DNA from: Mobula birostris
Lineage: Eukaryota
Direction of reading: 5' to 3'
Assembly: GCF_030028105.1 (NCBI RefSeq)
Contig: NC_092379.1
Span: 22,745,130 to 22,809,129 of the forward strand
DNA: 64,000 nucleotides
Position 1 is the stretch's first letter. Every line of letters starts with the position of its first letter. A program made the translations under genes and the position numbers. Below the pieces are notes generated by a model, which saw only the letters and a list, made by a program, of their open reading frames with translations, was not told where the DNA came from and did no database searches. This document shows positions 1,351-63,899 of the stretch, in pieces.

Positions 1351-2391
1351 GTGAGGGGGCCAGTGAAGGAGTGGAGCTTTGAGGCTTTGACTCGAGAGGC
1401 TTCGACGAGAAGAGGCAGAGGATGGACTTGCTCCCAGTTAGGCATTGCAGTGCCTCCTGAGATGGTGATGTTACTCTCATGTCAGATGTGGCAATCTTGG
1501 GGGAACTCCCCTCTCCCGCAGAGTCACATCTGCCAGAAGTGCATGCGGCTGGGTGATCTGGAAGACCATGTAAGGAATCTGGAGCAGCAGCTGGATGACC
1601 TTCGATTCGTAAGGGAGAATGAGGCAGTCATAGATGAGAGCTACAGGGAGGTAGTCACACCTAGGCTGCCAGAAGCAGGTCGTTGGGTGACAGTCAGAGG
1701 GGGGAAAGTGAAGGTGAGTAAACAGGTAGTGCAGAGCACCCCTGTAGCCATTCCCCTGAATAATAAGTTTACCGTCTTGGGTACGGTTGGCGGGGATGAC
1801 CGACCAGGTGTGAGCCACGGTGGCAGGGCCTCTGGCACTCAGTCTGACCCTGTAGTGCAGAAGGGTGGGAGGGAGAAGAGGAGAGCTGTCATCACTGGAG
1901 ACTCTATAGTCAGGGGAGCAGACAGGAGATTTTGTGGACATGAGAAGGACACCCGCATGGTTTGTTGCCTCCCGGGTGCCAGGGTCCGGGATGTATCTGA
2001 CCGGGTGCACAACATCATGATACAAGAGGGAAAGCAAGCAGAAGTGGTGATACATGTTGACACCAACGACATAGGCAGGAAGAGGGATGAGGTCCTGAAG
2101 TGTGAGTTTCGGAAACTAGGCAGAAGGCTGAAAAATAGGACCTCAAGGGTGGCGTTCTCAGGATTGCTGCCAGTGCTACGTGATAGTGATAGTAAGAATT
2201 GGAGGAGACGGCAGTTGAGTGCATGGCTGAGGAGTTGGTGTAGGGGGCAGGGTTTTAGATTTTTGGATCATTGGGATCTCTTCGGGGGAAGGTGGGACCA
2301 GTACAGATTGGATGGGTTGCACCTGAACTCGAGGGGGAGAAATATCCTTGCAGGTAGGTTTGCTAGCATGGTTCGGGAGGGTTTAAACTAA
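1351..2391 (+). CDS. CR1 ORF1 protein: Cys/His zinc-finger-like motif, coiled coil, SGNH esterase-like domain
   Basis: 346-aa open frame with HICQKC..LEQQLDDL, GDSIVRG, HVDTNDIG and DGLHLN motifs; true start probably near 1450. Confidence 0.85.
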   Translation: MRGPVKEWSFEALTREASTRRGRGWTCSQLGIAVPPEMVMLLSCQMWQSWGNSPLPQSHICQKCMRLGDLEDHVRNLEQQLDDLRFVRENEAVIDESYREVVTPRLPEAGRWVTVRGGKVKVSKQVVQSTPVAIPLNNKFTVLGTVGGDDRPGVSHGGRASGTQSDPVVQKGGREKRRAVITGDSIVRGADRRFCGHEKDTRMVCCLPGARVRDVSDRVHNIMIQEGKQAEVVIHVDTNDIGRKRDEVLKCEFRKLGRRLKNRTSRVAFSGLLPVLRDSDSKNWRRRQLSAWLRSWCRGQGFRFLDHWDLFGGRWDQYRLDGLHLNSRGRNILAGRFASMVREGLN

Positions 2392-2426
2392 TTTGCGAGG
2401 GGGATGGGACCCAGAGCGATAAAGCA

Positions 2427-5296
2427 GTGAAAGAAGTGCATGGAGTAAAGCCAGATCTAACATATAGAGAGGCTTTGAGGAAAGAGAAGCAGCATAAACG
2501 GTGTAAAGACAGTAAGGTAGAAGGGCTGAAATGTGTGAACCTCAATGCAAGAAGCATCAGGAACAAAGGTGATGAACTGAGAGCTTGGATACATACATGG
2601 AATTATGATGTAGTGGCCATTACAGAGACTTGGCTGGCACCATGGCGGGAATGGATTCTCAATATTCCTGGATTTCAGTGCATTAAAAGGGATAGAGAGG
2701 GGTGGAAAGGGGAGGAGGGGTGGCATTACTGGTGAGGGATACTATTACAGCTACAGAAATTGTGGGTAATGTAGCAGGATCCTCTTTTAAGTCAATAAGG
2801 GGGGAAGTCAGGAACAGGAAGGGAGCAGTTACTCTACTGGGGGTATTCTATAGGCCCCCTGGTAGCAGCAGAGATACAGAGGAGCAGATTGGGAGGCAGA
2901 TTTTGGAAAGGTGCAAAAATAACAGGGTTGTTATCATGGGTGACTTTAACTTCCCTAATATTGATTGGCACCTGATTAGTTCCAAGGATTTAGATGGGGC
3001 AGAGTTTGTTAAGTGTGTCCAGGATGGATTCCTGTCACAGTATGTGGACAGGCCGACGAGGGGGAATGCCATATTAGATCTAGTACTAAGTAATGAACTG
3101 GGTCAGGTCAGAGATCTCTCAGTGTGTGAGCATCTGGGGGACAGTAACCACCACTCCCTGGCCTTTAGCATTATCATGGAAAAGGATCAGAGAGGACAGG
3201 AAAATTTTTAATTGGGGAAAGGCAAATTATGAGGCTATAAGGCTAGGACTTGCGGGTGTGAATTGGGACGATGTCTTTGCAGGGAAATGTACTATGGATA
3301 TGTGGTCGATGTTTAGAGATCTCTTGCAGGATGTTAGGGATAAATTTGTCCCGGTGAGGAGGATAAAGAATGGTAGGGTGAAGGAACCATGGGTGACAAG
3401 TGTGGTGGAAAATCTAGTCAGGTAGAAGAAGGCAGCATACATGAGGTTTAGGAAGCAAGGATCAGATGGGTCTATTGAGGAAAATAGGGAAGCAAGAAAG
3501 GAGCTTAAGAAGGGGCTGAGAAGAGCAAGAAGGGGGCATGAGAAGGCCTTGGCGAGTAGGGTAAAGGAAAGCCCCAAGGCGTTCTTCAATTATGTGAAGA
3601 AAAAAAGGATGTCAGGAGTGAAGGTAGGACTGATTAGAGATGAAGGTAAGAAGATGTGCCTGGAGGCCGTGGAAGTGAGCGAGGTCCTCAATGAATACCT
3701 CTCTTCAGTATTCACCAATGAGAGGGAACTTGATGATGGTGAGGACAATATGAGTGAGGTTGATGTTCTGGAGCATGTTGATATTAAGGGAGAAGAGGTG
3801 TCGGAGTTGCTAAAATACATTAGGACAGATAAGTCCCCAGGGCCTGACAGAATATTCCCCAGGCTGCTCCACGAGGCAAGGGAAGAGATTGCTGAGCCTC
3901 TGGCTAGGATCTTTATGTCCTCGTTGTCCACGGGAATGGTACCGGAGGTTTGTAGGGAGGGGAATGTTGTCCCCTTATTCAAGAAAGGTAGTAGGGATAG
4001 TCCGGGTAATTATAGACCAGCGAGCCTTACGTCTGTGGTGGGAAAGCTGTTGGAAAAGATTCTTAGAGATAGGATCTATGGGCATTTAGAGAATCATGGT
4101 CTGATCAGGGACAGTCAGCATGGCTTTGTGAAGGGCAGACCATGTCTAACAAGCCTGATAGAGTACTTTGAGGAGGTGACCAGGCATATAGATGAGGGTA
4201 GTGCAGTGGGTGTGATCTATATGGATTTTAGGAAGGCATTTGACAAGGTTCCACATGGTAGGCTTATTCAGAAAGTCAGAAGTCATGGGATCCAGGGAAG
4301 TTTGGCCAGGTGGATTCAGAATTGGCTTGCCTGCAGAAGACAGAGGGTGGTGGTGGAGGGAGTACATTCAGATTGGAGGATTGTGACTAGTGGTGTCCCA
4401 CAAGGATCTGTTCTGGGACCTCTACTAATGACCTGGATGTGGGGGTAGAAGGGTGGGCTGGCAAGTTTCCAGATGACACAAAGGTTGGTGGTGTTGTAGA
4501 TAGTGCAGAAGATTGTCGAAGATTGCAGAGAGACATTGATGTGATGCAGAAGTGGACTGAAAAGTGGCAGATGGAGTTCAACCCGGAGAAGTGTGAGGTG
4601 GTACACTTTGGAAGGACAAACTCCAATGCAGAGTACAAAGTAAATGGCAGGATACTTGGTAGTGTGGAGGAGCAGGGGGATCTGGGAGTACATGTCCACA
4701 GATCCCTGAAAATTGCCTCACAGGTAGATAGGGTAGTTAAGAAAGCTTATGAGGTGTTAGCTTTCATAAGTTGAGGGATAGAGTTTAAGAGTCGTGATGT
4801 AATGATGCAGCTCTATAAAACTCTGGTTAGGCCACACTTGGAGTACTGTGTCCAGTTCTGGTCGCCTCACTATAGGAAGGATGTGGAAGCATCGGAAAGG
4901 TTACAGAGGAGACTTACCAGGATGCTGCCTGGTTTAGAGTGTATGCATTATGATTGGAGATTAAGGGAGCTAGGTCTTTACTCTTTGGAGAGAAGGAGGA
5001 TGAGAGGAGACATGATAGGGGTGTACAAGATAATAGGAGGAATAGATAGAGTGGATAGCCAGCACCTCTTCCCCAGGGCACCACTGCTCAATACAAGAGG
5101 ACATGGCTTTAAGGTAAGGGGTGGGAAGTTCAAGGGGGATATTAGAGGAAGGTTTTTCACTCAGAGAGTGGTTGGTGCGTGGAATGCACTGCCTGAGTCA
5201 GTGGTGGAGGCAGATACACTACTGAAGTTTAAGAGACTACTAGACAGGTATATGGAGGAATTTAAGGTGGGCGGTTATATGGGAGGCAGGGTTTGA
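2427..5296 (+). pseudogene. CR1 ORF2 (endonuclease-reverse transcriptase), disrupted
   Basis: Split over ORFs 2427-2735, 2702-3211, 3093-3425, 3441-4448, 4439-4774 and 4802-5296 by frameshifts and stops. Confidence 0.9.
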
Positions 5297-12214: not shown

Positions 12215-13883
12215 TCAGGAGCCTTTACAGTCTACTGCCACATTATCATTTCCCTCCTGTACATCTTGCATGTCATGTAAGCTGTAACAGTACATCATCG
12301 GTGTTTCTTTTTCCACTGGGCTTGATTCAGCAATTTCCAGGAGCATCGGGAAGCATTTTGTTGCGGCCTGCACTATAAGAGACTTGAGACACGGAAGAAA
12401 ACAGCACAAAACAATCGCACAGCTTACCAATACAATACCTACAGTTATCACTATCTTGGTCAGCCATGCTCCCCATCCCCCTAGTTTACTATCTAACCAG
12501 TCAAATAACTGATGTCCGAACCCTGCATTCTGTCTAACTTCTCTTCTCAGACTTTTCAATTTCTTCATTGCTCTGGTAAGTGATCCCTCCGTACTAGTGT
12601 TATTTGGTATAAAAGTACAGCACTGTTCTCCAAACATTACACAAACTCCTCCTTTTTCTGCCAACAGCCAGTCTAACACCTGTCTATTCTGCCACACCAC
12701 TCTACTGGTTGCATCCAGCTGTTGTCCTGGTGCCTCCAGCGCATCATCGGTGTAGTTAACGAATCTCTGTTGATTATAATATATATAATTTATCCATTCA
12801 ACATTTTTGCTAACCCCTATCACAGGTATAATCGCTTCCCAGCCAGCAGCAATCTCGTTTCTTGCCTTAAACTCGTTAGGTATACCTCTCGGCTGTCCTA
12901 TACTGTCGATTTGGATCATTGGATCAGGTTCATATTTTAGCCTCTTCCGCCGCAGTGTCTGCTACTTCGGAGTGCCAAATTGTACCTCGGGATACTACAG
13001 CTTCTTGAATCAGCATAACTCGTGGTGTACATGTACCTGCCCAACTAAGGGGAAGTGTGGAACTCAGGCCTTCCTCCATTCCATACAACCACCAAGTGTC
13101 CGCTAATGGAATGTCCTGGACATCCAACGCACCTTCCGGTGGAGGGGTACCTACTATGTATCTTCGGCCTGGGGTTACATACCAAGTCTGCACAAAGTTA
13201 CCCCTAAAATGGCCAACCGAAAAAGCACCTATCCGTGTAAAGCATTCATAATTCAAATGATTCTGCATTATCAGTTTTCCCACTATGGGGGTCTGACTTC
13301 TTTTACTAACAGTCCAGGGTCTGTTATAATTACATTTATGGGCGAGCACATTTTGATCGAATTGCAAGGAGGCTTGGGATAGCATACACCAATAAGGGCA
13401 ATATGGGCTGTTATCAATACATTTCTGAGAACAAGGATCCATCCCGCTACAAATTCCCATGCTGCAAGTCTTGACTACACTTGGACAGTGCCACGCACAC
13501 TGCCCCCTCTGCTCCTTTTGCCATTGTGTGCAGGTGGAGGGGTTATAAGGCATGGGGGCTACGTGTTGCATGGGCTTCGCCCTGGAGCACAGATAACAAT
13601 TCTGTCTCTCCATCATTCCTGCTGTGTATTGTGCCCATTGGTACCACTGGCTAGAACGCGTCTGTTGCCACTGCAATGAGGTAACTGTTGTGCTCCGCTT
13701 ACTCCTTTCTTTTAAGGTTTGCGGAGTCCTAACATTCCTATGTTATATCGGCCAAATTAATGGTTTCCAAGTCCATACAGGGGTTTGTGGGTGTATCATA
13801 CCAAGGGGCAAAACTGGTTGCTCCCAAGTCATCCTCACTGTCTGAAGGAGTACTACTATCCATAACCCCATCCTTTGGGTCAT
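12215..13883 (-). pseudogene. env: ERV env (SU + TM)
   Basis: Signal-like MGLWIVVLL overlapping the pol end in another frame; SU with CYLC (ORF 12930-13676); RRKR furin-like site near 12940-12951; TM ORF 12215-12919 with ISD QNRQVLDWLLAEKGGVC, CX6CC (CVMFGEQCC) and a hydrophobic anchor; one stop and one frameshift. Confidence 0.88.
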
Positions 13884-16800
13884 CAGACGGGTTCTCAAAC
13901 CCAAAAACTTCCCTTATGGTCTGATCAAACTCCTGTGGTACAGTGACAACTTCTTGTTCCTCTTGTCTGTCCCCTGCTATCCGTTCCTCTTCACCACTTA
14001 CCTTGGGCTTCACACCTGACTGTACCTGCGGGACTGCTCTGGTGCAGTGATTGAGATGGTACCAGGTGGAGCGTCCCTCTACTTGAACTGCGGTGGGTGA
14101 CGCCTTGGTTACCATAAAAGGTCCTTCCCTTCTTGGTTCGTTACACTTTCTTCGAAACGCTCGCACATAGACCTGATCTCCTGGCTTGATTGGTCTTTCC
14201 TTTTGCACGATCTCCGGCTCTTTCCGTTTTTCCTGTGCATTTATAGCCTTATGCAGCACGGTGAGTTGCTGCATGTATTGTTTTAGTTCTACTTCCAATT
14301 GTTCCAAGCTAGGCCCTTTATGTGGTCCTCTCCACTGGGGCACTGGCATGGGCCTTCCGGTTAGCATTTCATGCGGTTAGACATGTCACTCGATTAGTTT
14401 GCATGCGGTAACTCATTAACGCTAATGGCAGTGCGTCAATCCAGTTGAGTTTAGTACCCACACAAATTTTATTCAGTTTGGTATTTAGAGTCCCGTTAAT
14501 TCTTTCCACCATGCCCTGCGACTGAGGGTGATACACGCATCCAAACCTCTGCTTTATTCTTAGTGCTTGCAATACTAATTTGACCACTCTTTGGATAAAC
14601 GCTGAACCATTGTCTGAGCTGACTTCTGTAGGTATTCCGAATCTTGGGATTCCTTCGTTTGTCAGGAATTTTACCACTGTTCCTGCCCCTTGATCTTTCG
14701 AGGGTACTGCCTCTACCCATCTACTGAATCTGTCAATTACTACTAACATGTATCTTTTCCCTCTTACTGTCCTTATCATGTCTACGTAGTCAATCACTAA
14801 ATGTCTAAATGGCCCTTCGGGCACTGGTATATGACCTATTGGGGTTATAATTCCTTTCCGAACATTATTCTGTGAACATACCTCGCACTGCGACAGCACA
14901 TGGTCTACTGAAGCCTGTAAATAAGGTGACCAAAAACCCTCCTTTTTTATTTTCCTTATCACGTCCCTCCTTGCACAATGATCCATCCCATGCACGTATG
15001 CCGAATCAGTATAAATGTCTACTTTCTCACCTTCCATCATTTCACACACTGCTGTCAAGGCTTTGATTTCCGCTAATTGAGCGGAACACGGTTGGGGGCA
15101 AGGTTCCATTCTAATAGTTTTAAAACTTGTCTGATCCTGCTGCACTACTGAGAAACCTGCATGATTTCCATCATAATCCCTATAACAGGAGCCACCTACA
15201 AACAAAACCTTTTTATCTTCCTCTTCCAGTGGTTCGGATCGTAAATCTGCTCTCGATTTGGCAAATACCCTTGTTTCCCTTACACAGTCATGGGGTTCTC
15301 CTTCATGACCCAAGGGGACGTAATCAGCTATATTACTGCTAGTACATCTCTGTACAGTTATATCTGGAAATGTCAATAACATCTGATATGCTGTTATTCT
15401 GGCTAGTGTCAACACAAATTTACCTCTTTCCAGTAATTCTGTTACCTTGTGGTGTGTGTACAGGATCACAGGGTAGCCCATGGTCATGGATGATGCCTTT
15501 TCATAGGCATAGTATAATGCTGCTAATCCCTGATAAAGGGGGGGGGGGGGGGGGTACCCGAGCCACTTCATCCAATTTCGCACTATAGTATGCTATTGGT
15601 TGTTTTGCTTTTCCTGTGCCCGCCTCTTGTGTTAGAACCGCTGCGGCATAGCCTTCCTGCCGGCTGGATACATACAAATGAAAGTCCTTTTCATAGTCAG
15701 GCAAAGCTAACGCTGGGGCTGACTGCAATTCCTGTTTAATAGTATTAAACGCTATTTCTGCCTCCTCGTTCCACTGTAAGCCACATTTCACACTTGTATG
15801 TCCTGCCTCCTTCATTATTTTCCTTAATGGCATTACGATTTCAGCATATTCCCCAATCCAATCTGAACTGTATCCTGTTAGTCTTAAAAACGTCATCATC
15901 TGCTTTACTGTCTGGGGTTTAGGAGCTTTAGCTATTGCCACAATTTGACTCGGCGCTATCGCCTTCATTCCCTTGGAGATTACCCTACCTCGGTATTCTA
16001 CCTGTTGCTTACAGAATTGCAACTTCTTTTTGGATACCTTATGTCCCCCATACGCCAGTCTTTCTGAAAGGGTTACGGTATCCTGTTCACACTGCTCCTC
16101 ACTTTCGGAGCAAATTAACAAATCATCCACATACCGTATTAATGTACTTTCCAATTGTATACGCTCTAAGTCTGCCTTTAATACTTGATTAAAAATGTGC
16201 GGTGAGTGCTTAAATCCTTGTGGCATTCTGGTATAGGTATACTTGTTACCTCTGTGTGTAAATACAAATAAATACTGACACTGATCGGCCGGGGGAATGC
16301 TGAAGAAAGCTGAACACAAATCAATCACTGAAAAATAGCTTGATTCTGGCGGAACGTTAGTCAAAAGCGTGTGTGGGTTGGGGACTACGGCTGGCCAGTC
16401 CTCCACTACCTCATTTACCATTCGTAAATCATGTACCAGTCTCCATTTGGATTTGTCCGCTTTTAAGACGGGCAACAGCGGAGTATTACACGGACTATCT
16501 ATCCTCTTAAGTACGCCTGCTTCGAGCAACCCCTGTATCGTGGGCGCTATTCCCTCCTCTGCTTCTGGTCTTAGAGGGTATTGTGGTCTTCAGGGTGGAA
16601 CTGCTCCCTTTTTCAGTTTTATTTCTACCGGACTTGCTGTTTTTATTCTCCCTACATCCATGTCATGTTGCGACCACAGAATAGATGGTAACTGATCTAG
16701 CCTGTTATCTTTTCCCTGACCTTTCTCCTTTTACAACAGTGACATGTGCAGCTGAGGAATTACTTCGACCTCCTTTATAGTTCCTGTCATATCTATATCT

Positions 16801-17616
16801 ACCATTATTTTGATGTAGTTATTGTCTCCCGATGCCCATACCTCCGGCATGATTTTCCTCCAAACCATTACGGTTCCAGCGCGTTTTACTACGGATCCTA
16901 GGTCTCTAGACTGGTATCCTTCATTCACCAGCAATGTTATGTGGGGCACAGCCTCCGGTATTCTATACCATTTCTCCAAGAAGGTATTCCACCTGACTTG
17001 TAGGGCTGCCCCTTGCTTTCCAATTATTATAGCCTCTCCTCTTAGGTGCTGCCGGGTACATGTCCCCTTGTGCCATCTCTCCTCTAACTCTTTACTGAGT
17101 CTCGTCAAAAATCACTGTGCAATGTAACTCAGACTTAGGCACTTCCGCCTTGGGCAATATGGCCTGCACACCCTTTTTCCATTTTTCCCAGGTTTCCCCG
17201 ATCTGATCTTCTATGTCTCCTATCCAGAAAACATTAGCTTTCTTGATTTCCCGCACTAGTAGCTGAGTATTCGCTCTTTCCACACTCAACCCATTTCCAG
17301 TGCATTCTAATTTTAATTCTAGTTTTAATAGTGCATCTCTGCCTAGCAAATTCATCGGGGTTCCTTTGGACACTAATACTGGCAGAACTATTTTTTTACT
17401 GCCCATCCCCAACCGTACTGGAGCTGTATATTGTGTTAACTGTGTTTTCCCCGAGAACCCTACAGTCTTAAAACATTTTCCTGACATGGGAAGGTGAAGT
17501 GCATACTGTGGCTGTACACAGGTATACGTGGCTCCGGTGTCTATCATCATGGGTGTCAGTTGCCCTTCTAACATAACCTGAACAATGGGTTCCTCTTCCG
17601 CCTCCCTTGTTATCAC
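13738..17616 (-). pseudogene. pol: ERV pro-pol: protease, 2H phosphoesterase-like insert, RT, truncated RNase H, integrase
   Basis: IDTGA..LLGRD protease; LPQGF-like MPQGF and YVDD in RT; RNase H FVGGS..AQLAE..YTDSAY; integrase H..C..C, DYVD, SDNG, PQSQGMVER, GPF; several frameshifts. Confidence 0.93.
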
Positions 17617-30494: not shown

Positions 30495-32476
30495 TTAATT
30501 CTGCTTCAGAGAAAGTGTTTCCGCCAAAACTATCAGCTCCTCGTCTCGCTCCTGTGTCTGTACAAAGTCCTTCCTTGCTAATGCTAAGTCTGCCTCAACT
30601 CCCTCACTTCCTCTTGTTTCACTACGCTCCTTCTTTTCACTTTCTAACCCCCCCCCCCCCCCCCCCCGGTACAAGGCTGGTAAAAACGTCTCAGCTAATT
30701 CTATAGTTACTTCGGCAGCCTTTCTGGACACAGGCCGAGTCACTGCGCAAACGGGATAAACCTGTGAGTCCATGGGCGGGGCCTCAATCCTGGCAGGCTG
30801 GCCTGTCAGTTTTACTGCTGAGAACACATTTCCGCCGGCGAGGTCATTACCGAGTAAGACCTCCACGTCTCTCATCGGTAGTTCGGGCCTCACCCCGATC
30901 ATGACCAGTCCGGAGACCAAGTCGCTTTTTAGGTGTATCTGGTGCAAAGGTACTGCTTCAGTCCCTTTCCCAATGCCTTTTATCACTCTGACCTCCCCAG
31001 TCTCGGTCTCTGAACTAAAGTCTAAAACACTCCTTAAGATCAGTGACTGACAAGCTCCAGTGTCTCTCCAGATCCGTACTGGAACCGGGTTTAACCCCTC
31101 CTTCACCGACACCAATCTGGCCGAGATAAACCTCTCGCGCCCTTCCTGAACTTTGTCAGACCTCTTCTCTCCTAGTGGTTTGCTTACCAGCTCAATACAG
31201 CCAGTCGGAACCGCCGTTTTGCCTTTCCCCACCTCCTTCTTTGGGGCAAAGCACCTGGACGCAAAGTGTCGGACTTTCCCACAATTATAACATACGACCC
31301 CAGGAGACTTCCTACCAAACTGCTCCCAGTCTACCTTATCCTTCTCACTAGTCCCCAGTTTACTTTCTGACACTTCTGGCAAACTCTCCCCGCCGTCCTG
31401 ACTACCCTTCTGGTAGCCTTTACTCGGGGCAAACTTCGTTTTATGTGTCAACGCGTACTCATCCGCTAACTTAGCAGTTGCGGCTAAAGTGTCTGCCTCT
31501 TTCTCATCTAGGTAGGGTCTCATACCTTCAGGGACACAACCTTTAAACTGCTCAATCGGGATTAGCTGTAGCAGTCTGTCATAATCCCCGTTGACCCCTT
31601 TCGAGGCGGACCAACGCTCACAATAAGTCTGCAGCTCATGGGCAAACTCTAAATACGTGCGGCCCCACTGCTTCCTCGCATTCCGGAACCTCTGCCGGTA
31701 TGCCTCCGGGACCAACTCATAAATCCTGAGGATGGCCTTTTTCACCACCTCATACTTCTGGGCATCTTCTGCGGACAAAGCCGAGTAAGCTTGTTGGGCT
31801 TTTCCTTTAAGTACACTCTGAAGCAAAACAGCCCACTTATCCCTCGGCCAGTCCTGACTTACAGCAACTTTTTCAAAATGTAGAAAGTATCGATCAACAT
31901 CGGTCTCGTCAAATGGGGGAACCAGCCTAACCTCCTGGGTCGCCCTAAACCCTCCACCTTGGTTCGGCATGGGCCCCTGCGCTGCCCTCATCTTTATCCT
32001 CTCCAGCTCGAATTCCCTTTCCCTCTGTTTCTCTTCTCACTCCAACTGTTTGTCCCTCTCTTCTCGCTCCAACTGCCTCTGTCTCTCTTGCCGTTCTAAC
32101 TGTCTCTCTCTCTCTTGCCGTTCTAACTGTCTCTCTCTCTCTTGCCGTTCTAACTGTCTCTCTCTCTCTTGTCGTTCTGTTTCTCTTCGTGTTCTAGCTG
32201 CCGTACCCGGAACTCGTGCTCAAGTCTCAATTTTTCAAGCTGCACCTGTACTGCGTCTCCACCAGGTTTTCCAATAGATATCACCTCCAGCTCCCCTTGG
32301 GGAAACACACCTTTCGACACATAATGCTCCATGATAGCTCTGTGCATCTTCTCTCTCCTCATTGTCGACTTCCCCTTAAAAAGATTCAATCGTTTGGCCA
32401 CAGCTGCCAATTCCGCTTTCCTGGCATCCTCTAATGCCTCCGAGGTCGGCACCTTTAGAAATTCCTCAATCTCCAT
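30495..32476 (-). pseudogene. gag: Gypsy gag-protease (SCAN/capsid-like, zinc knuckle, aspartic protease)
   Basis: ORFs 32150-32476 and 30495-31991 (498 aa): RLVPPF..YFLHFEK..LVPEAYRQRFR, CYNCGKVRHFASRC, WRDTGACQS. Confidence 0.85.
32060..32180. repeat. ~27-bp tandem repeat (about 4 copies) inside Gypsy gag coiled coil
   Basis: Unit ctctctctcttgccgttctaactgtct. Confidence 0.8.
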
Positions 32477-40985: not shown

Positions 40986-41073
40986 CAGCGCTCACTGCGG
41001 CTCCGGACAAAGACGGCCTGAGCTGCAGTCGCCGATCTCAACAGTGTCCAAGTCCGGCTCAGTGTTCAGGGCG

Positions 41074-41119
41074 ATGGGGGTCGTTCCTTATCTCTGTCTC
41101 CTCCTGTCTTGTCTGGCAG
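41074..41119 (+). CDS. IgW: IgW leader exon (MGVVPYLCLLLSCLA-G)
   Basis: 46-nt hydrophobic signal exon, phase-1 donor G|GTGGGT; 109-nt intron; resembles skate IgX leaders as I recall them. Confidence 0.9.
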
Positions 41120-41228
41120 GTGGGTGTCCCGCGGCTTGTCGCCCTCCCGGGGCCGGCTGTTTCTCGGAGGCTTTGTGAATCTCTGCCCGTGGAACATTTT
41201 ATTAATTTCTGCTCTTTTTTATTGACAG

Positions 41229-41526
41229 GCGTGCGGTCCGCCGTCGTGCTGACACAGCCCGAGTCAGCGGTGGTAAAGCCCGGACAGTCCTACAGACTGA
41301 CCTGTGCGGTCAGTGGGATCAGCCTCAGCGGATATAGCATGGGCTGGGCGAAACAGGTCTCCGGGAGTGAGCGGGAGTGCCTGGCAGTGATTTACTCTGA
41401 TGGTGACACACGCTACGCGACTGGAGTCGAGAGCCGGTTCACTATTTCCAAGGACAGCAGCGCCGTCTACCTGCAAATGAACAACCTGAGACCGGACGAC
41501 ACGGCCACCTATTACTGTGCGGCAGA
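41229..41526 (+). CDS. IgW: IgW VH segment, germline, open
   Basis: After ttgacAG: GVRS-AVVLTQPESAVVKPGQSYRLTC..MGWAKQVSGSERECLA..RFTISKDSSAVYLQMNNLRPDDTATYYCAA; canonical Cys22, Trp36, Cys92. Confidence 0.97.
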
Positions 41527-41565
41527 CACAGTGAGACAGACCGAGACTGGACCGGGACAAAAACC
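41527..41565 (+). other. V 3' RSS (23-bp spacer)
   Basis: CACAGTG (41527-41533) + 23 nt + ACAAAAACC (41557-41565), perfect consensus. Confidence 0.97.
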
Positions 41566-41922
41566 CAGCGAGAGCGCCTGTCCTTCGGGCGCTGAGGGAA
41601 AGGACAGCAGTGATCGCCACAGCTGTATCTCGGTCGTTCTGGGCCACATCCGCTCGTCCACGCAATGGAAGGCGGGTTGTCAGCGGGGAGTCCCGAGAAG
41701 AGATGCTGGCCAGATGGATCGAGGGGCTCAGCGGATCACTTCAGAGGGCAGCTCGGAGCCAAGCGCTGTAAGTGGGAATGGGATCACCGATCGACCTGGT
41801 CAGGTGTCGGTCCTTCGTCTACACGTCGGGCTGTGAGGAACATTAATGATCAGAGACACTTTGGTGTTCTGGTGCGGTTTGACTGAGGAGTGACTGTGCT
41901 GGGAGACAGTGAGAGGGGCGGA

Positions 41923-42003
41923 GGTTATCGTACGGCGGTGTATCACTGTGACTGTGCTGGGTGGCACAGTGTGAGAGATGGCGGCTCCCTCCATACACAA
42001 ACC
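41923..42003 (+). other. IgW: D1 segment (coding 41951-41964, ACTGTGCTGGGTGG) with 12-RSS and 23-RSS
   Basis: GGTTATCGT-12-CACTGTG / 14 nt / CACAGTG-23-ACACAAACC. Confidence 0.93.
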
Positions 42004-42338
42004 TACCGCAACAAAACTCTTTAAATTGGGCTCTTCGGGCGCTTCCACCGGCCTTTACCCCGGATCCCGTGGATATAAATCAGATCCCGAGTGGATAATC
42101 CGGGAGTGGGTACAAGTTCCACTGGAGATGTGTCCGGAAGGGAACGGGACCACCGAGGAGGATCTGTCAGGGGAAGCCCAGTGAAAGGTCCCGGTGGGTT
42201 ATATCATCTCCACTTCAGCACTGGGACGGCCGAGATTGAGACCCGCTGTGTGGGACACCCGAACACAGCGGGAGGGTTTAATAAATCCGCTGACCGGCTC
42301 TGGGATCCACTGGATTTCGGGCTGGATGTGATGAAGAC

Positions 42339-42402
42339 GGTTTGTGACCTGCGGTAAAGCACCGTGATATGGACCACGGTGATGGGGAGCTGAACAGAAA
42401 CT
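42339..42402 (+). other. IgW: D2 segment (coding 42367-42374, ATATGGAC) with 12/12 RSS
   Basis: GGTTTGTGA-12-CACCGTG / 8 nt / CACGGTG-12-ACAGAAACT. Confidence 0.9.
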
Positions 42403-42736
42403 GGTCCCGACAAAGGAGCGTCTGCAGCGCCGTCTGTCTCCACGGATTCCGCATTGCTGCCTCCCAGAGTCAAATCCATGAAGATTCACTCGGACTGCTG
42501 GGCGCAAATGTCCATTTCTGGACAAATAAAGCCAAAAAGGATTCGACTCTCATTCTGGGTGATGGCGGGAGCCGGTGTCCGCAGACAGGAAAACTGTGAA
42601 AATGCCTCTTTTATTCACACACCAGGAAGAGACAAGGACGGAGTTTGGGATGGAAATCCAGGAAGCGGCTGCTCCCGGTCCGGACAGGGATCATGTTGAC
42701 ATTTTGCTGAGATTATTGGATGTGACAGGCAAGTGA

Positions 42737-42775
42737 AGTTACTGCACTGGGTGAATGGGGAGACGGAGCACCGTG
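42737..42775 (+). other. J 5' RSS (23-bp spacer, weak nonamer)
   Basis: AGTTACTGC-23-CACCGTG. Confidence 0.75.
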
Positions 42776-42823
42776 ACTATTTTGACTACTGGGGCGGAGG
42801 AACCTCGCTGACAGTGACTTCAG
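42776..42823 (+). CDS. IgW: JH segment (YFDYWGGGTSLTVTS)
   Basis: WGxG motif, phase-1 donor G|GTAAGA at 42824. Confidence 0.97.
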
Positions 42824-45069
42824 GTAAGACCAACTTCTCAATTGTATCTTCACGCACTGGTATTTTATTTATTTACGGTTCTGGCGAATTCAGTGATTCA
42901 CCCGAAATCAGTGAGATATCTAAAGCAAGTACGTGAATCTCCCTGAACCGGCGGGTTTCTCTAGAGCCCAGTAACAGTACAAGGGTACATACCCCACCCA
43001 CCAGTGAACTGTCCACCGACCGGGAACAGGCTCAGGGGAATGGGGTCGGATCTTGTCACCAGACTGTGTCTTGACACCGGCCGACTGTGCTGAGTGAGCT
43101 CAGTGTTTGGTTCAAGTCTGGCTTCTGATCCTCAGCACCAACTGAAGCCACGGTCAGGGGCTGAGCGTTTCAGTGCAGTTGAACTTGTTCCCTGTCAGCG
43201 ACAACAATGGATCTGTTCAGTGTCCAGTTATTGGGATCGGGTTTTACTGTCGGCTGCTTTCATGTTGAAGGTAATGGGATTCAGACATAATCTGAGGGAA
43301 TGGTGTACACATGTATGATCTGGTTGATGGCTCAATATCCCCAGGGTACAGGTGGGTGTCAGTCCCATCATGTAATGTCCGGAGTGAGGTCCGTCCCGGG
43401 ATACAGCAAAAGTATCGGCGATATCCCAGGATTAATTGATGGGATTAAGGTTTTAGTTTTATTCCCTGATGGGTAAAGAGGTGGGGTGCGGTGGGGAAGA
43501 ATTTTGGAGTTGGGAAGGCAGTGGGGAAGTGGTGCGGGAAAGGTAAGGCAGGAAATTGGAATCACAATTCCTTCACACAGCCTTGCATTAGTGGGTGGGG
43601 GAGTGGGGAGTGGTGCAGGTGGGGTGGGGAGGGAAGCGTTCAAGTCAATAATGTGTAATAGGCGAGCATATCAGGGAAGGTTTGTTGTTGAAGGTTTGTG
43701 ATCTGGAACACACTGCCTGAATGATGGTATTGGCCAATTGTGAGTGTAGAGAGGGAACAGGAGGAGATCTACCTTTTGTCGGGATACTGGGAAGAGCAGA
43801 GAGACCAATGGGTTTGTTGGGTTTGCTCAGCTAAAGGGAAGCACAGACACTATCGGATGAATGGCCTCACTCTCTGCTCTGTCATTCAATGGAATCAGTA
43901 TTTATCTTGTAAATCTGGGAAATTCTTCCTCGAAGGGATTCCAACAAGCACCCAGAGTACACAGAGCATGAGTTAAATGCAGATGACAGCACCCATGTCC
44001 TGTCCTGGCAGCCATGGATTAGATACAAAGATCCTTCTGCACTGTCCCATCCCTCCCAGGGCAGGGGCAGCAGAGGTTAGACACAGAGTGAAGCTTCCCC
44101 CAACCTGTCCCATCACACACTCACGGGACACGAGTTGAACTTTACTGTTCAAATGAACTGCTTATTCTCAGTTCACAGACAGAGCAACTGCTCTAATTTC
44201 TTGCCCTCCTCCACCCCCAGACTGGGTTTGTTTAACCTCCATTAACCACTGTTGCTGGTGATTCAGTAAAAGTGATTGTGAGATAAAGTGCTGACATTTA
44301 CAGAGCACCTTTCATGGTGTCCCCGAGCTCTTCACAGGCAATGAAGTAGTTTCAAAGTACAGCCCTGTTGTAGAGTCGGGAATGTGGAGCCACTCTGCAC
44401 ACAGCAGAATCCACAAACTGCAAGGTGAGAACAATCAGACAGTCTGTTCTGGTGATGTTATTGAAGGAGAAGTATTGTCCAGGACTCCGTGGACACAGTG
44501 ATCCAATGGACAGGCACAAGGTTGGATTCAGTGTGATGGGAAACAGGGCAGTACATCAAAGCAGATGAGTAGTGCAGAGGGATGGATGAACAGTCCACGG
44601 ATACCACCACAACAAAACTGACAAATTTAAACTCAGTTCATAATAATCTGCAACAGATTTGGATCTGTGGTCAGATTTCCAACAACTTAATAATTGGTAT
44701 TGTTTTTAAATCTAGTCATTAGTAACGATAACCCTTCAGTTTTACTGATGTCCCTCAGGGAAGGAGATCTCTCATCCTTACCCTTCGAGCCTATTTATAA
44801 CTCCTGACTCATCAATGTGTTTGTCTCCCAATGCCCTCTGAATGGCAGCTCAGATGTGTAATTCATTCAGACTTTCCTGGAAAAGCTCAGATCCCAAAGG
44901 ATGAATAAACAAAATTGCCCACCTTTTGTTCATACTACCTGATGTTCCATCCACTTACTACAATACAGACTAAAATCCGACCGAGTCTCTCCCAATCTAC
45001 TGATTCACCATTGATCATTTCGTGCAAATTCCCAAGTGTTATTTCATTGCAAATTTCTTCTGAGCTGAT

Positions 45070-48503: not shown

Positions 48504-49071
48504 AGGTCAAGTCCTAGCCTTCAGTCTTCATCACTCCTTCCTGCAACATAGAATGTGACTAAGGCATCAGGCTCCTCTGTCTGGTCAAGGATGATCAGCC
48601 TGGGAGCATCAGTCAGACCTGGTCACTAACAGTAGGGACATCACCGCTGGACTTAGGAAATTCCAGGCCGGCTGGTGGCGCAGTGAGATTAGCACCGGAC
48701 TCTGGAGCGAAGGTTCCCGAGTTCGAATCCTGGTTAGGCCACTCCCGAGCATGCTCTTCATCATTCCGGCTTGAGTGTTGAGATAGCCACTTGGCCTCAT
48801 AAGAAATATGTAAGAGTCAAGTCAGGAACGTTCATAACGTGACCTGGTTAATTCTGACACCACGTGCCAGACAAGAATGGCTAAATGTCTGGTACGACAT
48901 GCTGAAAAACTAAGAAATACCCGGCGGTGTTGGGGCAAAATTCAAAGTACACGATGAGCAGCTTGCTCGAAGTCTCTGCGGCGGACTGGAAGAATAAAGT
49001 CTGCTCCTGCAAGGCAGGGTACAAGCCAAACAAGATTGTGACAGTGGAGTGGCAGAAACATCAACCTCAAC
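48504..49071 (+). pseudogene. IgW: IgW CH1 pseudo-exon
   Basis: Acceptor ttctttccatttcAG; EVKS*PSVFITPSCNIECD*GIRLLCLVKD..W; TAG 48515-48517, TAA 48560-48562, -1 frameshift ~48625, SINE 48662-48910; resumes [32 protein letters not shown]; donor C|GTTAGT. Confidence 0.9.
48662..48910 (+). mobile_element. tRNA-derived SINE inserted in CH1
   Basis: A-box-like tggtggcgcagtgag, B-box gagttcgaatcc; TSD TAGGAAAT (48654-48661) / TAAGAAAT (48911-48918); removing it restores [11 protein letters not shown]. Confidence 0.88.
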
Positions 49072-49954: not shown

Positions 49955-50266
49955 CTACTGCTATAGCTCCGAAGCTCAGCTCCCTTGTTCCATCCCGGGA
50001 GGCAATCCACAGTCAAGCAAATGTTGTCCTGGCCTGTGTGATATCTGGATTCACTCCTGACAACGTTGAAGTATCCTGGAAAAAAGCTGGATCTGCCCAA
50101 AAAGGGATCATTCTCCCTTCCACTTCGAGTTCAGGTGGTGGATTTGAAACAATCGCTTACCTGACAGTGCCTGTGCAGGAATGGACCAAGGAACAGAAAT
50201 ATACTTGTGAAGTGAATCACGCACCTTCCCATTTCAGTGGTCAGGTCAACATGATGTATCAAGGGG
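49955..50266 (+). CDS. IgW: IgW CH2 exon
   Basis: 312 nt, phase 1/1, open: TAIAPKLSSLVPSREAIHSQANVVLACVISGFTPDNVEVSWKK..FETIAYLTV..YTCEVNH..MYQG; donor GTAAGT. Confidence 0.95.
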
Positions 50267-63513: not shown

Positions 63514-63816
63514 AGTTGTCTGTCTTTATCCAAAATCCCTCCATTGAAGAGATGTGGATCAACCAGACCGCTACTCTGGTGTGTATGATTGTGGGTGCTG
63601 ATCTGAGCCAGGTCCAAATCCACTGGAAGGTGAATGAGAGGGAGAAAATCAAAGCAAATGTCACCAAAAAACTGAGAGAGGAAGGAACCCAAGACACAGT
63701 GATCAGCCAACTCCAGGCCAGTGTGGAGGAGTGGACCAGTGGGGTGGAGTACACTTGCTCTGCCCAACAACCTTCTGCAACCTCACCAGTATCAGCACGG
63801 ACAAAAAGTACCAAAG
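63514..63816 (+). CDS. IgW: Second CH3-like exon (provisional CH7)
   Basis: 303 nt, phase 1/1, open: LSVFIQNPSIEEMW..LVCMIV..IHW..EEWTSGVEYTCSAQ; roughly half the residues identical to CH3. Confidence 0.92.
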
Positions 63817-63899
63817 GTGGGCAAGAGGTCAGCGATTAAAATGGACAACGTTGGTTACCTCAGTAAAAATGTTTGACATTTCCATTGTTTGCCCATCAG

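What the first reader, a model, noticed from the sequence alone, without database searches (positions are those of the whole stretch)
41378..41964. Non-canonical FR2 Cys47 with a Cys-encoding D1: possible programmed FR2-CDR3 disulfide
Seen: V has a third Cys (TGC, 41378-41380). D1 ACTGTGCTGGGTGG reads TVLG, LCWV or CAGW, so two of three frames supply a Cys; D2 ATATGGAC reads IW, YG or MD; no forward frame has a stop. By the 12/23 rule D1 (12/23) cannot join J directly, while D2 (12/12) can join V or D1. Established: camelid VHH (Cys at 45 or 50, or in CDR1) and IgNAR types I and II tether CDR3 through extra germline Cys paired with D-encoded Cys. Inference: CDR3 could be pinned over the former VL interface.
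Basis: partly seen in the sequence, partly recalled or inferred. Interest (0 to 1): 0.72.

Follow-up and report, generated by a model that had tools for sequence, protein, structure and literature searches.

The report
Ray single-domain antibody: Cys47–CDR3 tether
In a manta-ray IgW antibody gene that skips its light-chain-holding domain, the variable gene carries an extra cysteine where the light chain would normally dock. All five readable rearranged transcripts carry exactly one matching cysteine in the antigen-binding CDR3 loop, as expected if the loop is tied down by a disulfide, as in camel and shark single-domain antibodies.

Summary
TGC at 41378-41380 replaces Trp47 of framework 2 (WAKQVSGSERECLA). 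D1 is ACTGTGCTGGGTGG (12/23 signals) and puts Cys in two of its three frames. D2 is ATATGGAC (12/12). V and J carry 23-bp signals.

New evidence:
- **Rarity.** Of 50 heavy-chain-type V genes on this chromosome, only this cluster and one recent duplicate have Cys47.
- **D1 is derived.** Trp47 IgW clusters with intact CH1 have a Cys-free D1 (ACTATACTGGGTGG). Cys-coding D1 copies occur only in three clusters that share the same dead CH1.
- **Expression.** Contigs from four runs show spliced, rearranged transcripts of this V. All five junctions shown that are specific to this V are in frame, and each has exactly one CDR3 Cys (chance about 0.002-0.005). Only one of those Cys comes from D1's germline codon. 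In another, D1 is read in its Cys-free frame and the Cys lies elsewhere, which points to selection on the protein.
- **Cys47 is kept.** No variant reaches 5% at that codon.

The disulfide itself is unproven, the sample is tiny, and nothing is known from other species. No paper describing this turned up in five full-text searches. The scan had already noted the dead CH1 and the framework-2 motif on this same window. I rate it a convergent new variant of the VHH/IgNAR theme.

The parts
41074..41119 (+). Leader exon (ATG at 41074; donor GT at 41120)
   Evidence: Sequence. Leader-to-V splice contigs join 41119 to 41229 in all four runs (table 5).
41229..41526 (+). VH exon of the IgW cluster, with three Cys (22, 47, 92)
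   Evidence: Pfam V-set, E = 3e-14. Translation. Very high contig depth compared with the V-J intervening DNA.
41369..41380 (+). Framework-2 codons GAG CGG GAG TGC = E44 R45 E46 C47; the Cys47 codon is 41378-41380
   Evidence: Aligned opposite GLEW of solved VH/VHH chains. This exact motif occurs only twice in the genome.
41527..41565 (+). V recombination signal: CACAGTG, 23-bp spacer, ACAAAAACC
41893..41904 (+). Relic D1-like copy ACTGTGCTGGGA with degenerate heptamers. It is present in Trp47 clusters too and may be the conversion donor for the Cys-coding D1.
   Evidence: Alignment of D1 regions; sequence. The donor role is inference.
41923..41950 (+). D1 5' signal: GGTTATCGT, 12-bp spacer, CACTGTG
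41951..41964 (+). D1 ACTGTGCTGGGTGG (frames TVLG / LCWV / CAGW)
   Evidence: Pieces CTGTGCT and CTGTGCTGG were found inside rearranged junction contigs attached to this V's unique end.
41965..42003 (+). D1 3' signal: CACAGTG, 23-bp spacer, ACACAAACC
42339..42366 (+). D2 5' signal: GGTTTGTGA, 12-bp spacer, CACCGTG
42367..42374 (+). D2 ATATGGAC (frames IW / YG / MD)
42375..42402 (+). D2 3' signal: CACGGTG, 12-bp spacer, ACAGAAACT
42737..42775 (+). J signal: weak nonamer AGTTACTGC, 23-bp spacer, CACCGTG
42776..42823 (+). JH (YFDYWGGGTSLTVTS; donor GT at 42824)
   Evidence: V-to-J joints end at 42778-42790.
48504..49071 (+). Dead CH1 exon: in-frame stops plus a 243-bp dispersed-repeat insertion. 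It is skipped in the mRNA.
   Evidence: Translation shows stops, whereas CH1 of L011 and L016 is intact. Query positions 163-406 match a repeat dispersed over many chromosomes. Contigs that end at J's last base, 42823, continue with the first 29 bases of CH2.
49955..50266 (+). CH2 exon, spliced directly to J
   Evidence: The loose-end letters after J equal 49955-49983 exactly. Pfam C1-set. Exon ends.

Best explanation
This is the V-D1-D2-J part of a manta-ray IgW minicluster whose mRNA skips a dead CH1 exon, so the chain is of the heavy-chain-only type.

The VH gene has been remodelled at the former light-chain interface: V37A, G44E, L45R and W47C. I propose that the germline Cys47 forms an intradomain disulfide with a single Cys in CDR3, tying the loop down over that interface. 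This would resemble the camelid VHH FR2/CDR-to-CDR3 bridges and the IgNAR type I FR2-to-CDR3 bridge.

The partner Cys comes from two sources. D1 has acquired two base changes relative to the Cys-free D1 of conventional clusters, and these put TGC or TGT in two of its three frames. Junctional nucleotides supply the Cys otherwise. B cells or chains with an unpaired Cys47 would be selected against.

Shown here: the gene anatomy, the restriction of Cys47 and of Cys-coding D1 to the dead-CH1 lineage, transcription, rearrangement, J-to-CH2 splicing, retention of Cys47, and one Cys in each sampled productive CDR3.

Inferred: that the two Cys are bonded, that the bond pins CDR3 over the old VL face, and that no light chain is attached.
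For: 1. Cys47 is rare and lineage-specific. Two of 50 heavy-chain-type V genes have it, and the motif occurs exactly twice in the genome.

2. The two Cys47 clusters are recent duplicates, with C exons 99-100% identical. Yet their V exons differ at 11 bases in 7 codons, all nonsynonymous, 6 of them in CDR1, CDR2 or the V end, while framework 2 is identical. That is the pattern expected of working, diversifying antigen-binding genes.

3. D1 of the Trp47, CH1-intact clusters L011 and L016 is ACTATAC(T/A)GGGTGG, with no Cys. D1 here is ACTGTGCTGGGTGG. The duplicate has ACTATGCTGGGTGG, with Cys in one frame. A third dead-CH1 cluster, L021, has ACTGTGCTATGGGATGG.

4. Contigs of four runs show V and J at roughly 100- to 1000-fold or more the depth of the DNA between them, leader-to-V splicing and J-to-CH2 splicing.

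5. The V end ...TGTGCGGCAG is unique in the genome. The five junctions shown that carry it are all in frame and read CAA-FLTLCFWSMGQNDY-W, CAA-GVSVLARCSPLY-W, CAA-EPPQHCGVWRSSRGY-W, CAA-DTGEQCLPHHIDY-W and CAA-DLSGQLKCTTSTFDY-W. Each has exactly one Cys. The joint chance under a composition-matched, stop-free null is 0.005 for at least one Cys and 0.002 for exactly one.

6. In the second junction D1 is read in its Cys-free frame (SVLA) and the Cys lies elsewhere, as expected if the Cys is selected.

7. No variant reaches 5% at the Cys47 codon in any run.

8. Positions 45 and 47 lie on the same face of the C' strand, and FR2-to-CDR3 or CDR-to-CDR3 bridges are established in VHH (PMC11509895, PMC3149040) and in IgNAR type I (PMC4622739).
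Against: - There is no protein, mass-spectrometry or structural evidence for the bond.
- Only five complete junctions were visible. The tool shows those with the highest depth, 234 others were not shown, and one clone recurs in two runs. The sample is therefore small and possibly biased towards expanded clones.
- No comparison set of CDR3s from Trp47 clusters or from out-of-frame joins could be drawn.
- Only one of five Cys is clearly D1-encoded, which weakens 'programmed'.
- The runs are labelled RNA only by a guess, although the spliced and rearranged contigs argue for RNA.
- L021 shows that a Cys-coding D1 can sit beside a V without Cys47 (it has Arg47), so D1-Cys and Cys47 are not strictly coupled.
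- No orthologue with Cys47 was found in other rays among annotated proteins, so conservation is unknown.
Confidence: 0.6

Rival explanations
1. Cys47 is an incidental Trp-to-Cys change (TGG to TGC) that merely removes the hydrophobic light-chain contact. It stays free or buried. The CDR3 cysteines seen are a sampling accident or reflect the Cys-rich D1, not pairing.
For: One base change suffices. Other V genes on the chromosome replace Trp47 with Arg, Ser, Thr or Tyr without adding a Cys, so loss of Trp may be the selected feature. The transcript sample is five sequences.
Against: Exactly one Cys in five of five in-frame CDR3s has a chance of about 0.002-0.005, and most of these Cys are not D1's germline codon. 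Cys47 is kept in both duplicates while their CDRs diverged only by amino-acid changes. An unpaired surface Cys in a secreted Ig domain is normally selected against (established knowledge of ER thiol retention).
Confidence: 0.17
2. Cys47 makes an interchain bond. It would link the two V domains of the homodimer, or link V to another chain or partner, replacing the lost CH1-to-light-chain bond. The CDR3 Cys would serve another purpose.
For: CH1, which in intact clusters carries the extra Cys (SSC/PSC), is lost, so covalent architecture had to change. Position 47 lies on a dimerisation face.
Against: E44 and R45 make that face hydrophilic, which argues against V-V packing (VHH logic in PMC3149040). 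One extra Cys in V plus one in CDR3 is the parity expected of an intradomain pair. An interchain Cys47 bond would leave the CDR3 Cys unpaired. CH2 has only its two canonical Cys.
Confidence: 0.1
3. The transcripts are real but the product is not a functional antibody. It would be abundant, non-selected transcription of a decaying cluster, so neither Cys matters.
For: CH1 is a pseudo-exon. Related clusters (L021, L025-L030) look scrambled or are germline-joined.
Against: All five specific junctions are in frame, where about one in three would be expected by chance. Many distinct junction contigs exist (table 5). All other exons are open. The duplicates show only amino-acid-changing differences, concentrated in the CDRs.
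Confidence: 0.08

Closest known systems
Camelid VHH with a second disulfide (CDR1, FR2 Cys45 or CDR2 Cys50 to CDR3)
   Same: A VH-type domain on a heavy chain that lacks CH1. It has hydrophilic changes at 44 and 45 (identical residues, Glu44 and Arg45) and loss of Trp47. A germline extra Cys in V is matched by one Cys in CDR3. The CDR3s sampled are 12-15 residues long.
   Different: The isotype is IgW (IgD-like) in a ray, not IgG in a mammal, so the origin is independent. The Cys is at position 47 itself, which I did not find reported for VHH. Position 37 is Ala rather than Phe or Tyr. The gene is a single-V minicluster with two D segments. CH1 is skipped because of a dead exon carrying a repeat insertion and stops, not the camelid donor-site mutation.
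IgNAR type I (nurse shark): FR2 and FR4 Cys bonded to CDR3 Cys
   Same: A cartilaginous-fish heavy-chain-only receptor. A framework-2 Cys tethers CDR3 against the framework. Cys codons occur in germline D segments. The organisation is a minicluster.
   Different: The V here is a true VH with CDR2, 61-74% identical to the conventional VH genes of the same genome, not a V-NAR. There are two D segments rather than three, one extra framework Cys rather than two, and six C exons of IgW type with CH1 dead.
Conventional elasmobranch IgW/IgM miniclusters (V-23 | 12-D1-23 | 12-D2-12 | 23-J)
   Same: The segment order and signal spacers are identical. The J and the CH2-CH6 exons are 93-99% identical to those of the neighbouring Trp47 IgW clusters L011 and L016.
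   Different: Framework 2 is SERECLA instead of GKGLEWL, D1 carries Cys codons, and CH1 is dead and skipped.

Membership tests
Elasmobranch IgW minicluster | One V, D1, D2, J and a C set, with signals 23 | 12/23 | 12/12 | 23 | tested here: met
   Coordinates and spacers verified. The neighbouring clusters have the same layout.
Elasmobranch IgW minicluster | Six C-domain exons of IgW type | tested here: met
   Dead CH1 plus five C1-set exons. CH1/CH2 match ray gene models. NCBI names a sawfish relative, found through its V domain, 'immunoglobulin delta heavy chain-like'.
Heavy-chain-only antibody V domain with a tethering disulfide (works like VHH or IgNAR) | Germline non-canonical Cys in the V gene | tested here: met
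   TGC at 41378-80, giving three Cys in the V exon.
Heavy-chain-only antibody V domain with a tethering disulfide (works like VHH or IgNAR) | Matching Cys in the CDR3 of productive rearrangements | tested here: met
   Five of five V-specific in-frame junctions have exactly one Cys. The sample is small and picked by depth.
Heavy-chain-only antibody V domain with a tethering disulfide (works like VHH or IgNAR) | Hydrophilic remodelling of the VL interface (positions 37, 44, 45, 47) | tested here: met
   A37, E44, R45 and C47, against V37, G44, L45 and W47 in most of the other V genes surveyed.
Heavy-chain-only antibody V domain with a tethering disulfide (works like VHH or IgNAR) | mRNA lacks CH1 | tested here: met
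   Contigs ending at J's last base continue with CH2 bases 49955-49983 in all four runs. CH1 has stops and an insertion. J is nearly identical in other clusters, so attribution to this cluster rests on its dead CH1.
Heavy-chain-only antibody V domain with a tethering disulfide (works like VHH or IgNAR) | Disulfide physically formed; no light chain on the protein | not testable with these tools
   Needs protein chemistry or a structure. A rearranged sequence could not be handed to the folding tool.
Camelid VHH (by descent) | IGHV3-derived VHH gene used with hinge-bearing IgG2/IgG3 of Camelidae | tested here: not met
The resemblance is convergent.
IgNAR | V-NAR domain without CDR2; three D segments; five C domains | tested here: not met
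   The V aligns full-length, CDR2 included, with VH and VHH. There are two D segments and six C exons.

The most novel reading that the evidence does not exclude
Manta rays have evolved, from IgW, a third independent lineage of heavy-chain-only antibodies. Its VH domain is stabilised by a germline Cys47 bonded to a CDR3 Cys, and its D1 segment was retuned by two base changes, possibly copied from an adjacent relic, to supply that Cys. This would repeat, residue for residue at positions 44 and 45, the solution found by camelids.
Probability: 0.5. Interest if true: 0.88.

Novelty: new variant of a known kind. Interest (0 to 1): 0.75.

Why it matters
Flajnik, Deschacht and Muyldermans (PMC3149040) list four convergent requirements for heavy-chain-only antibodies: loss of the first C domain, a diverse autonomous V, a soluble former VL face, and non-canonical disulfides. 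This locus appears to meet all four in a third lineage, and on a true VH scaffold.

The Cys47/CDR3-Cys pairing is the piece that speaks to the fourth requirement. It is also directly testable with existing public reads.

If it holds, it strengthens the case that such bridges are a near-obligatory solution for single VH domains. It also offers a new VH-type, urea-adapted single-domain scaffold. Finally, it gives a natural example of a D segment changing together with a V-framework change.

Tried and rejected
- **Protein database searches.** Searches with the V exon alone, with V inside a longer frame, and with a stingray IgW model found ray VH gene models, all with Trp47. No orthologue with Cys47 appeared, so cross-species conservation could not be tested. 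The length filter and the word index make this a weak negative.
- **Second sequencing-run search.** A search with the FR2-CDR2 stretch (after two failed attempts) found the words only in the same organism. That says nothing about relatives.
- **Literature.** Five full-text searches and reading PMC12227049 turned up no description of CH1-less IgW or of a Cys47 VH in rays.
- **Inverted D1.** I considered an inverted D1 in junction EPPQHCGV..., where there is an 8-base reverse-complement match. I rejected it because an inversional V-D1 join would need a 23/23 pairing, and the match is short.
- **Partial loose end.** The loose end after 41526 reads DRKCADNGNN. It is a consensus of seven different contigs with 0.76 agreement, so I did not count it as a sequence.
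- **Cross-mapped junctions.** Junctions whose V side stops at 41521 or earlier (for example AGGG and AGAGGGTG) were set aside. That stretch is shared by all clusters, and AGAGGGTG matches the germline-joined L025-type genes.
- **Structure prediction.** Folding a rearranged domain was not possible, because only unaltered window or locus translations may be submitted. Folding the V exon alone would not show CDR3.
- **One reads call only.** No control set from Trp47 clusters or from out-of-frame joins could be drawn.

Full report
**What is there**

The finding lies inside a cartilaginous-fish heavy-chain minicluster on the + strand. Its parts are:
- a leader exon, 41074-41119;
- a VH exon, 41229-41526;
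- D1, 41951-41964;
- D2, 42367-42374;
- JH, 42776-42823;
- a CH1 exon, 48504-49071, with in-frame stops and a 243-bp insertion;
- five open C1-set exons, the last of which carries a secretory tail.

The genome is a ray. The contig that holds the window is 148,671,352 bases long. That equals the longest-contig figure attached to two NCBI proteins named Mobula birostris. This agrees with the earlier scan note that called it a manta or devil ray.

**The observation**

TGC at 41378-41380 is real. Framework 2 reads WAKQVSGSERECLA. A gap-free alignment to solved VH and VHH chains puts the Cys opposite the Trp of GLEW, which is Kabat position 47. The conventional codons AAA GGG CTG GAG TGG have become AGT GAG CGG GAG TGC, and Val37 has become Ala.

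D1 is ACTGTGCTGGGTGG, reading TVLG, LCWV or CAGW. D2 is ATATGGAC, reading IW, YG or MD. Neither has a stop in any forward frame.

**Is it special?**

I searched the whole genome with the V exon and read framework 2 in 50 heavy-chain-type V genes on this chromosome. Only this gene and one paralogue, 709 kb upstream (L002), have Cys47. The exact motif occurs twice in the genome.

The two clusters are recent duplicates. Their C exons are 99-100% identical, and the dead CH1 is 99.8% identical. Their V exons nevertheless differ at 11 bases in 7 codons. All 7 codon changes alter the amino acid. Six of them lie in CDR1, CDR2 or the V end, and framework 2 is untouched. That pattern is expected of working genes whose binding loops are diversifying, not of decaying copies.

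**D1 compared with conventional clusters**

Only six unjoined D1 elements of this family exist in the genome.
- The Trp47 clusters L011 and L016 have an intact CH1 with the usual extra Cys. Their D1 is ACTATACAGGGTGG or ACTATACTGGGTGG, with no Cys in any frame.
- The Cys47 duplicate has ACTATGCTGGGTGG, with Cys in one frame.
- This cluster has ACTGTGCTGGGTGG, with Cys in two frames.
- A third cluster, L021, shares the very same dead CH1, at 99.5% identity over all 568 bases including the insertion. It has one copy reading ACTGTGCTATGGGATGG (Cys in two frames) and one Cys-free copy.

Cys-coding D1 is therefore derived, and it is confined to the lineage with the dead CH1. The coupling to Cys47 is not strict, however. 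L021's V has Lys44, Met45 and Arg47 (KKMERLV), which is a second, independent remodelling of the same three interface positions.

A degenerate relic 58 bases upstream of D1 (41893-41904) reads ACTGTGCTGGGA in all clusters, Trp47 ones included. It could have donated both Cys-making bases by conversion. That is inference.

**Expression**

Four runs of one study hold all sampled words of the V exon. Laying their contigs on 41040-42900 showed:
- V and J at roughly 100- to 1000-fold or more the depth of the DNA between them;
- the leader-to-V splice;
- many V-to-J joints;
- contigs that end at J's last base and continue with CTACTGCTATAGCTCCGAAGCTCAGCTCC.

That last string equals 49955-49983, the start of CH2. 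CH1 is therefore skipped, which confirms by my own call what the earlier scan note reported.

The last 30 bases of V are shared by all clusters up to ...TGTGCG. The continuation GCAG(A) is unique in the genome. The tool printed the letters between V and J for 12 joints. Five of these, plus one repeat of the same junction in another run, carry that unique end.

Put in frame, with TGT at 41516-18 and the J TGG at 42790-92, all five are productive:
- CAA-FLTLCFWSMGQNDY-W
- CAA-GVSVLARCSPLY-W
- CAA-EPPQHCGVWRSSRGY-W
- CAA-DTGEQCLPHHIDY-W
- CAA-DLSGQLKCTTSTFDY-W

Each has exactly one Cys in a CDR3 of 12-15 residues. With random, stop-free sequences of the same length and base composition, the joint chance is 0.005 for at least one Cys in all five and 0.002 for exactly one.

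The first junction uses D1's germline CTG TGC T. The second contains CTGTGCTGG read in the Cys-free frame (S-V-L-A), and its Cys lies further on. The other three show no convincing D1. The Cys therefore seems to be required whatever its source. This points to selection on the protein, with D1 raising the starting frequency.

No alternative letter reaches 5% at 41378-80 in any run, so Cys47 is not mutated away. The duplicate gene is expressed too: its CDR1 letters and its Pro-to-Leu difference at 41280 both appear.

**How it most likely works**

An Ig domain with three Cys needs a fourth. Position 47 lies on the C' strand, on the same face as position 45, and between positions 45 and 50. Camelid VHHs are known to carry an extra Cys in FR2 or CDR2, as well as in CDR1, bonded to CDR3 (PMC11509895 and PMC3149040; the exact positions are from my own knowledge of Nguyen et al. 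2000 and Vu et al. 1997, not checked here). IgNAR type I bonds a framework-2 Cys to CDR3 and holds the loop against the framework (PMC4622739).

With Glu44 and Arg45 beside it and CH1 absent from the message, the most economical reading is a Cys47-to-CDR3 disulfide. It would fold CDR3 over the former light-chain face of an autonomous VH. I put this at about 0.6.

The steps not shown are the bond itself, the loop geometry and the absence of a light chain.

**Rivals**

- **Cys47 is merely a way of losing Trp47 and stays unpaired (0.17).** Other V genes on the chromosome do replace Trp47 with Arg, Ser, Thr or Tyr. However, this does not explain one Cys in every sampled CDR3.
- **Cys47 makes an interchain bond (0.10).** This would leave the CDR3 Cys unpaired, and it clashes with the charged face.
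- **The product is not functional (0.08).** This is contradicted by five of five joins being in frame, by many distinct junction contigs, and by amino-acid-only divergence in the CDRs.

**Limits**

- The sample is five junctions chosen by the tool for depth. 234 more were not shown, and one clone recurs in two runs.
- I had a single reads call, so there is no control from Trp47 clusters or from out-of-frame joins.
- The runs are called RNA only by a guess, though spliced and rearranged contigs argue for it.
- Annotated proteins of other rays (Mobula hypostoma, Pristis pectinata, Hemitrygon akajei) all showed Trp47. The search could easily miss an unannotated orthologue.
- Non-canonical Cys pairs are not unique to this lineage. 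A sawfish germline-joined IgW gene with intact CH1 has one Cys next to CDR2 and one in CDR3 (P0011). A Trp47 manta gene has two Cys in a germline-joined CDR3 (P0025).

**Novelty**

Five full-text searches and the most relevant recent paper on elasmobranch IgH loci (PMC12227049) gave no description of a CH1-less IgW, of VHH-like framework 2 in rays, or of a Cys47 VH. The mechanism is of a known kind, a non-canonical tethering disulfide in a single-domain antibody. What is new is the lineage, the isotype, the position, and a D segment that appears to have changed along with it. I rate it a new variant of a known kind, with interest 0.75.

Noticed in passing
L021 / L043-L044 (G000:C12:20250000-20269999): A third cluster shares the same dead CH1 (99.5% identity, including the insertion). 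Its V has framework 2 KKMERLV (G44K, L45M, W47R), an independent remodelling of the same three VL-contact positions. V is germline-joined to a D1 with one Cys (CVKGCYYDEWG...). It is followed by V fragments, two spare D1 copies and what looks like a germline-joined D2-J.
   Followed up: partly
window 48504-49071; G000:C12:18.45-19.75 Mb (L024-L030 clusters): The 243-bp insertion in CH1 is a dispersed repeat found on many chromosomes. The same insertion, at the same place, occurs at 84% identity in about nine further clusters. Those clusters have Trp47, a scrambled FR1 (ESACGKARTFSQTDC) and a germline-joined V-D-D. The insertion is therefore older than the Cys47 change.
   Followed up: partly
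window 41893-41904: A relic D1-like copy, ACTGTGCTGGGA, with dead heptamers lies 58 bases upstream of D1. It is conserved in Trp47 clusters and carries the two bases that make D1 Cys-coding here, so it is a possible gene-conversion donor.
   Followed up: partly
L001 versus L002 (G000:C12:22786360 and 22077548): The two Cys47 V exons differ at 11 bases in 7 codons, with no synonymous change. Six of the seven codons are in CDR1, CDR2 or the V end, whereas the flanks and C exons are 99-100% identical.
   Followed up: yes
G000:C12:24.03-24.27 Mb (L049-L052, L054, L056, L058, L064): An array of VH-like genes has Ser47, Thr47 or Tyr47 (GLESL, GLETL, LEYL). Two of them have four Cys (L050, L052). They may be V genes used with another receptor chain.
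   Followed up: no
L012 (G000:C12:21848389); P0011 (Pristis pectinata); P0025 (Mobula birostris, C12:20117729): Conventional Trp47 genes also carry extra Cys. L012 has a Cys in CDR2. The sawfish germline-joined VDJ has one Cys next to CDR2 and one in CDR3. P0025 has two Cys in a germline-joined CDR3.
   Followed up: no
window 63516-63839: A second CH3-like exon lies about 6 kb after the secretory CH6. It is the start of what the earlier scan note s1-145307 reads as the membrane end of the gene.
   Followed up: no
window 12215-17616 (- strand), 30495-31991 (- strand), 1351-5296 (+ strand): Long open frames resembling retroelement genes (protease/RT/integrase-like and envelope-like on the minus strand, a gag-like frame, and a LINE-type reverse transcriptase) lie upstream of the Ig cluster. 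I observed them only in the ORF list.
   Followed up: no
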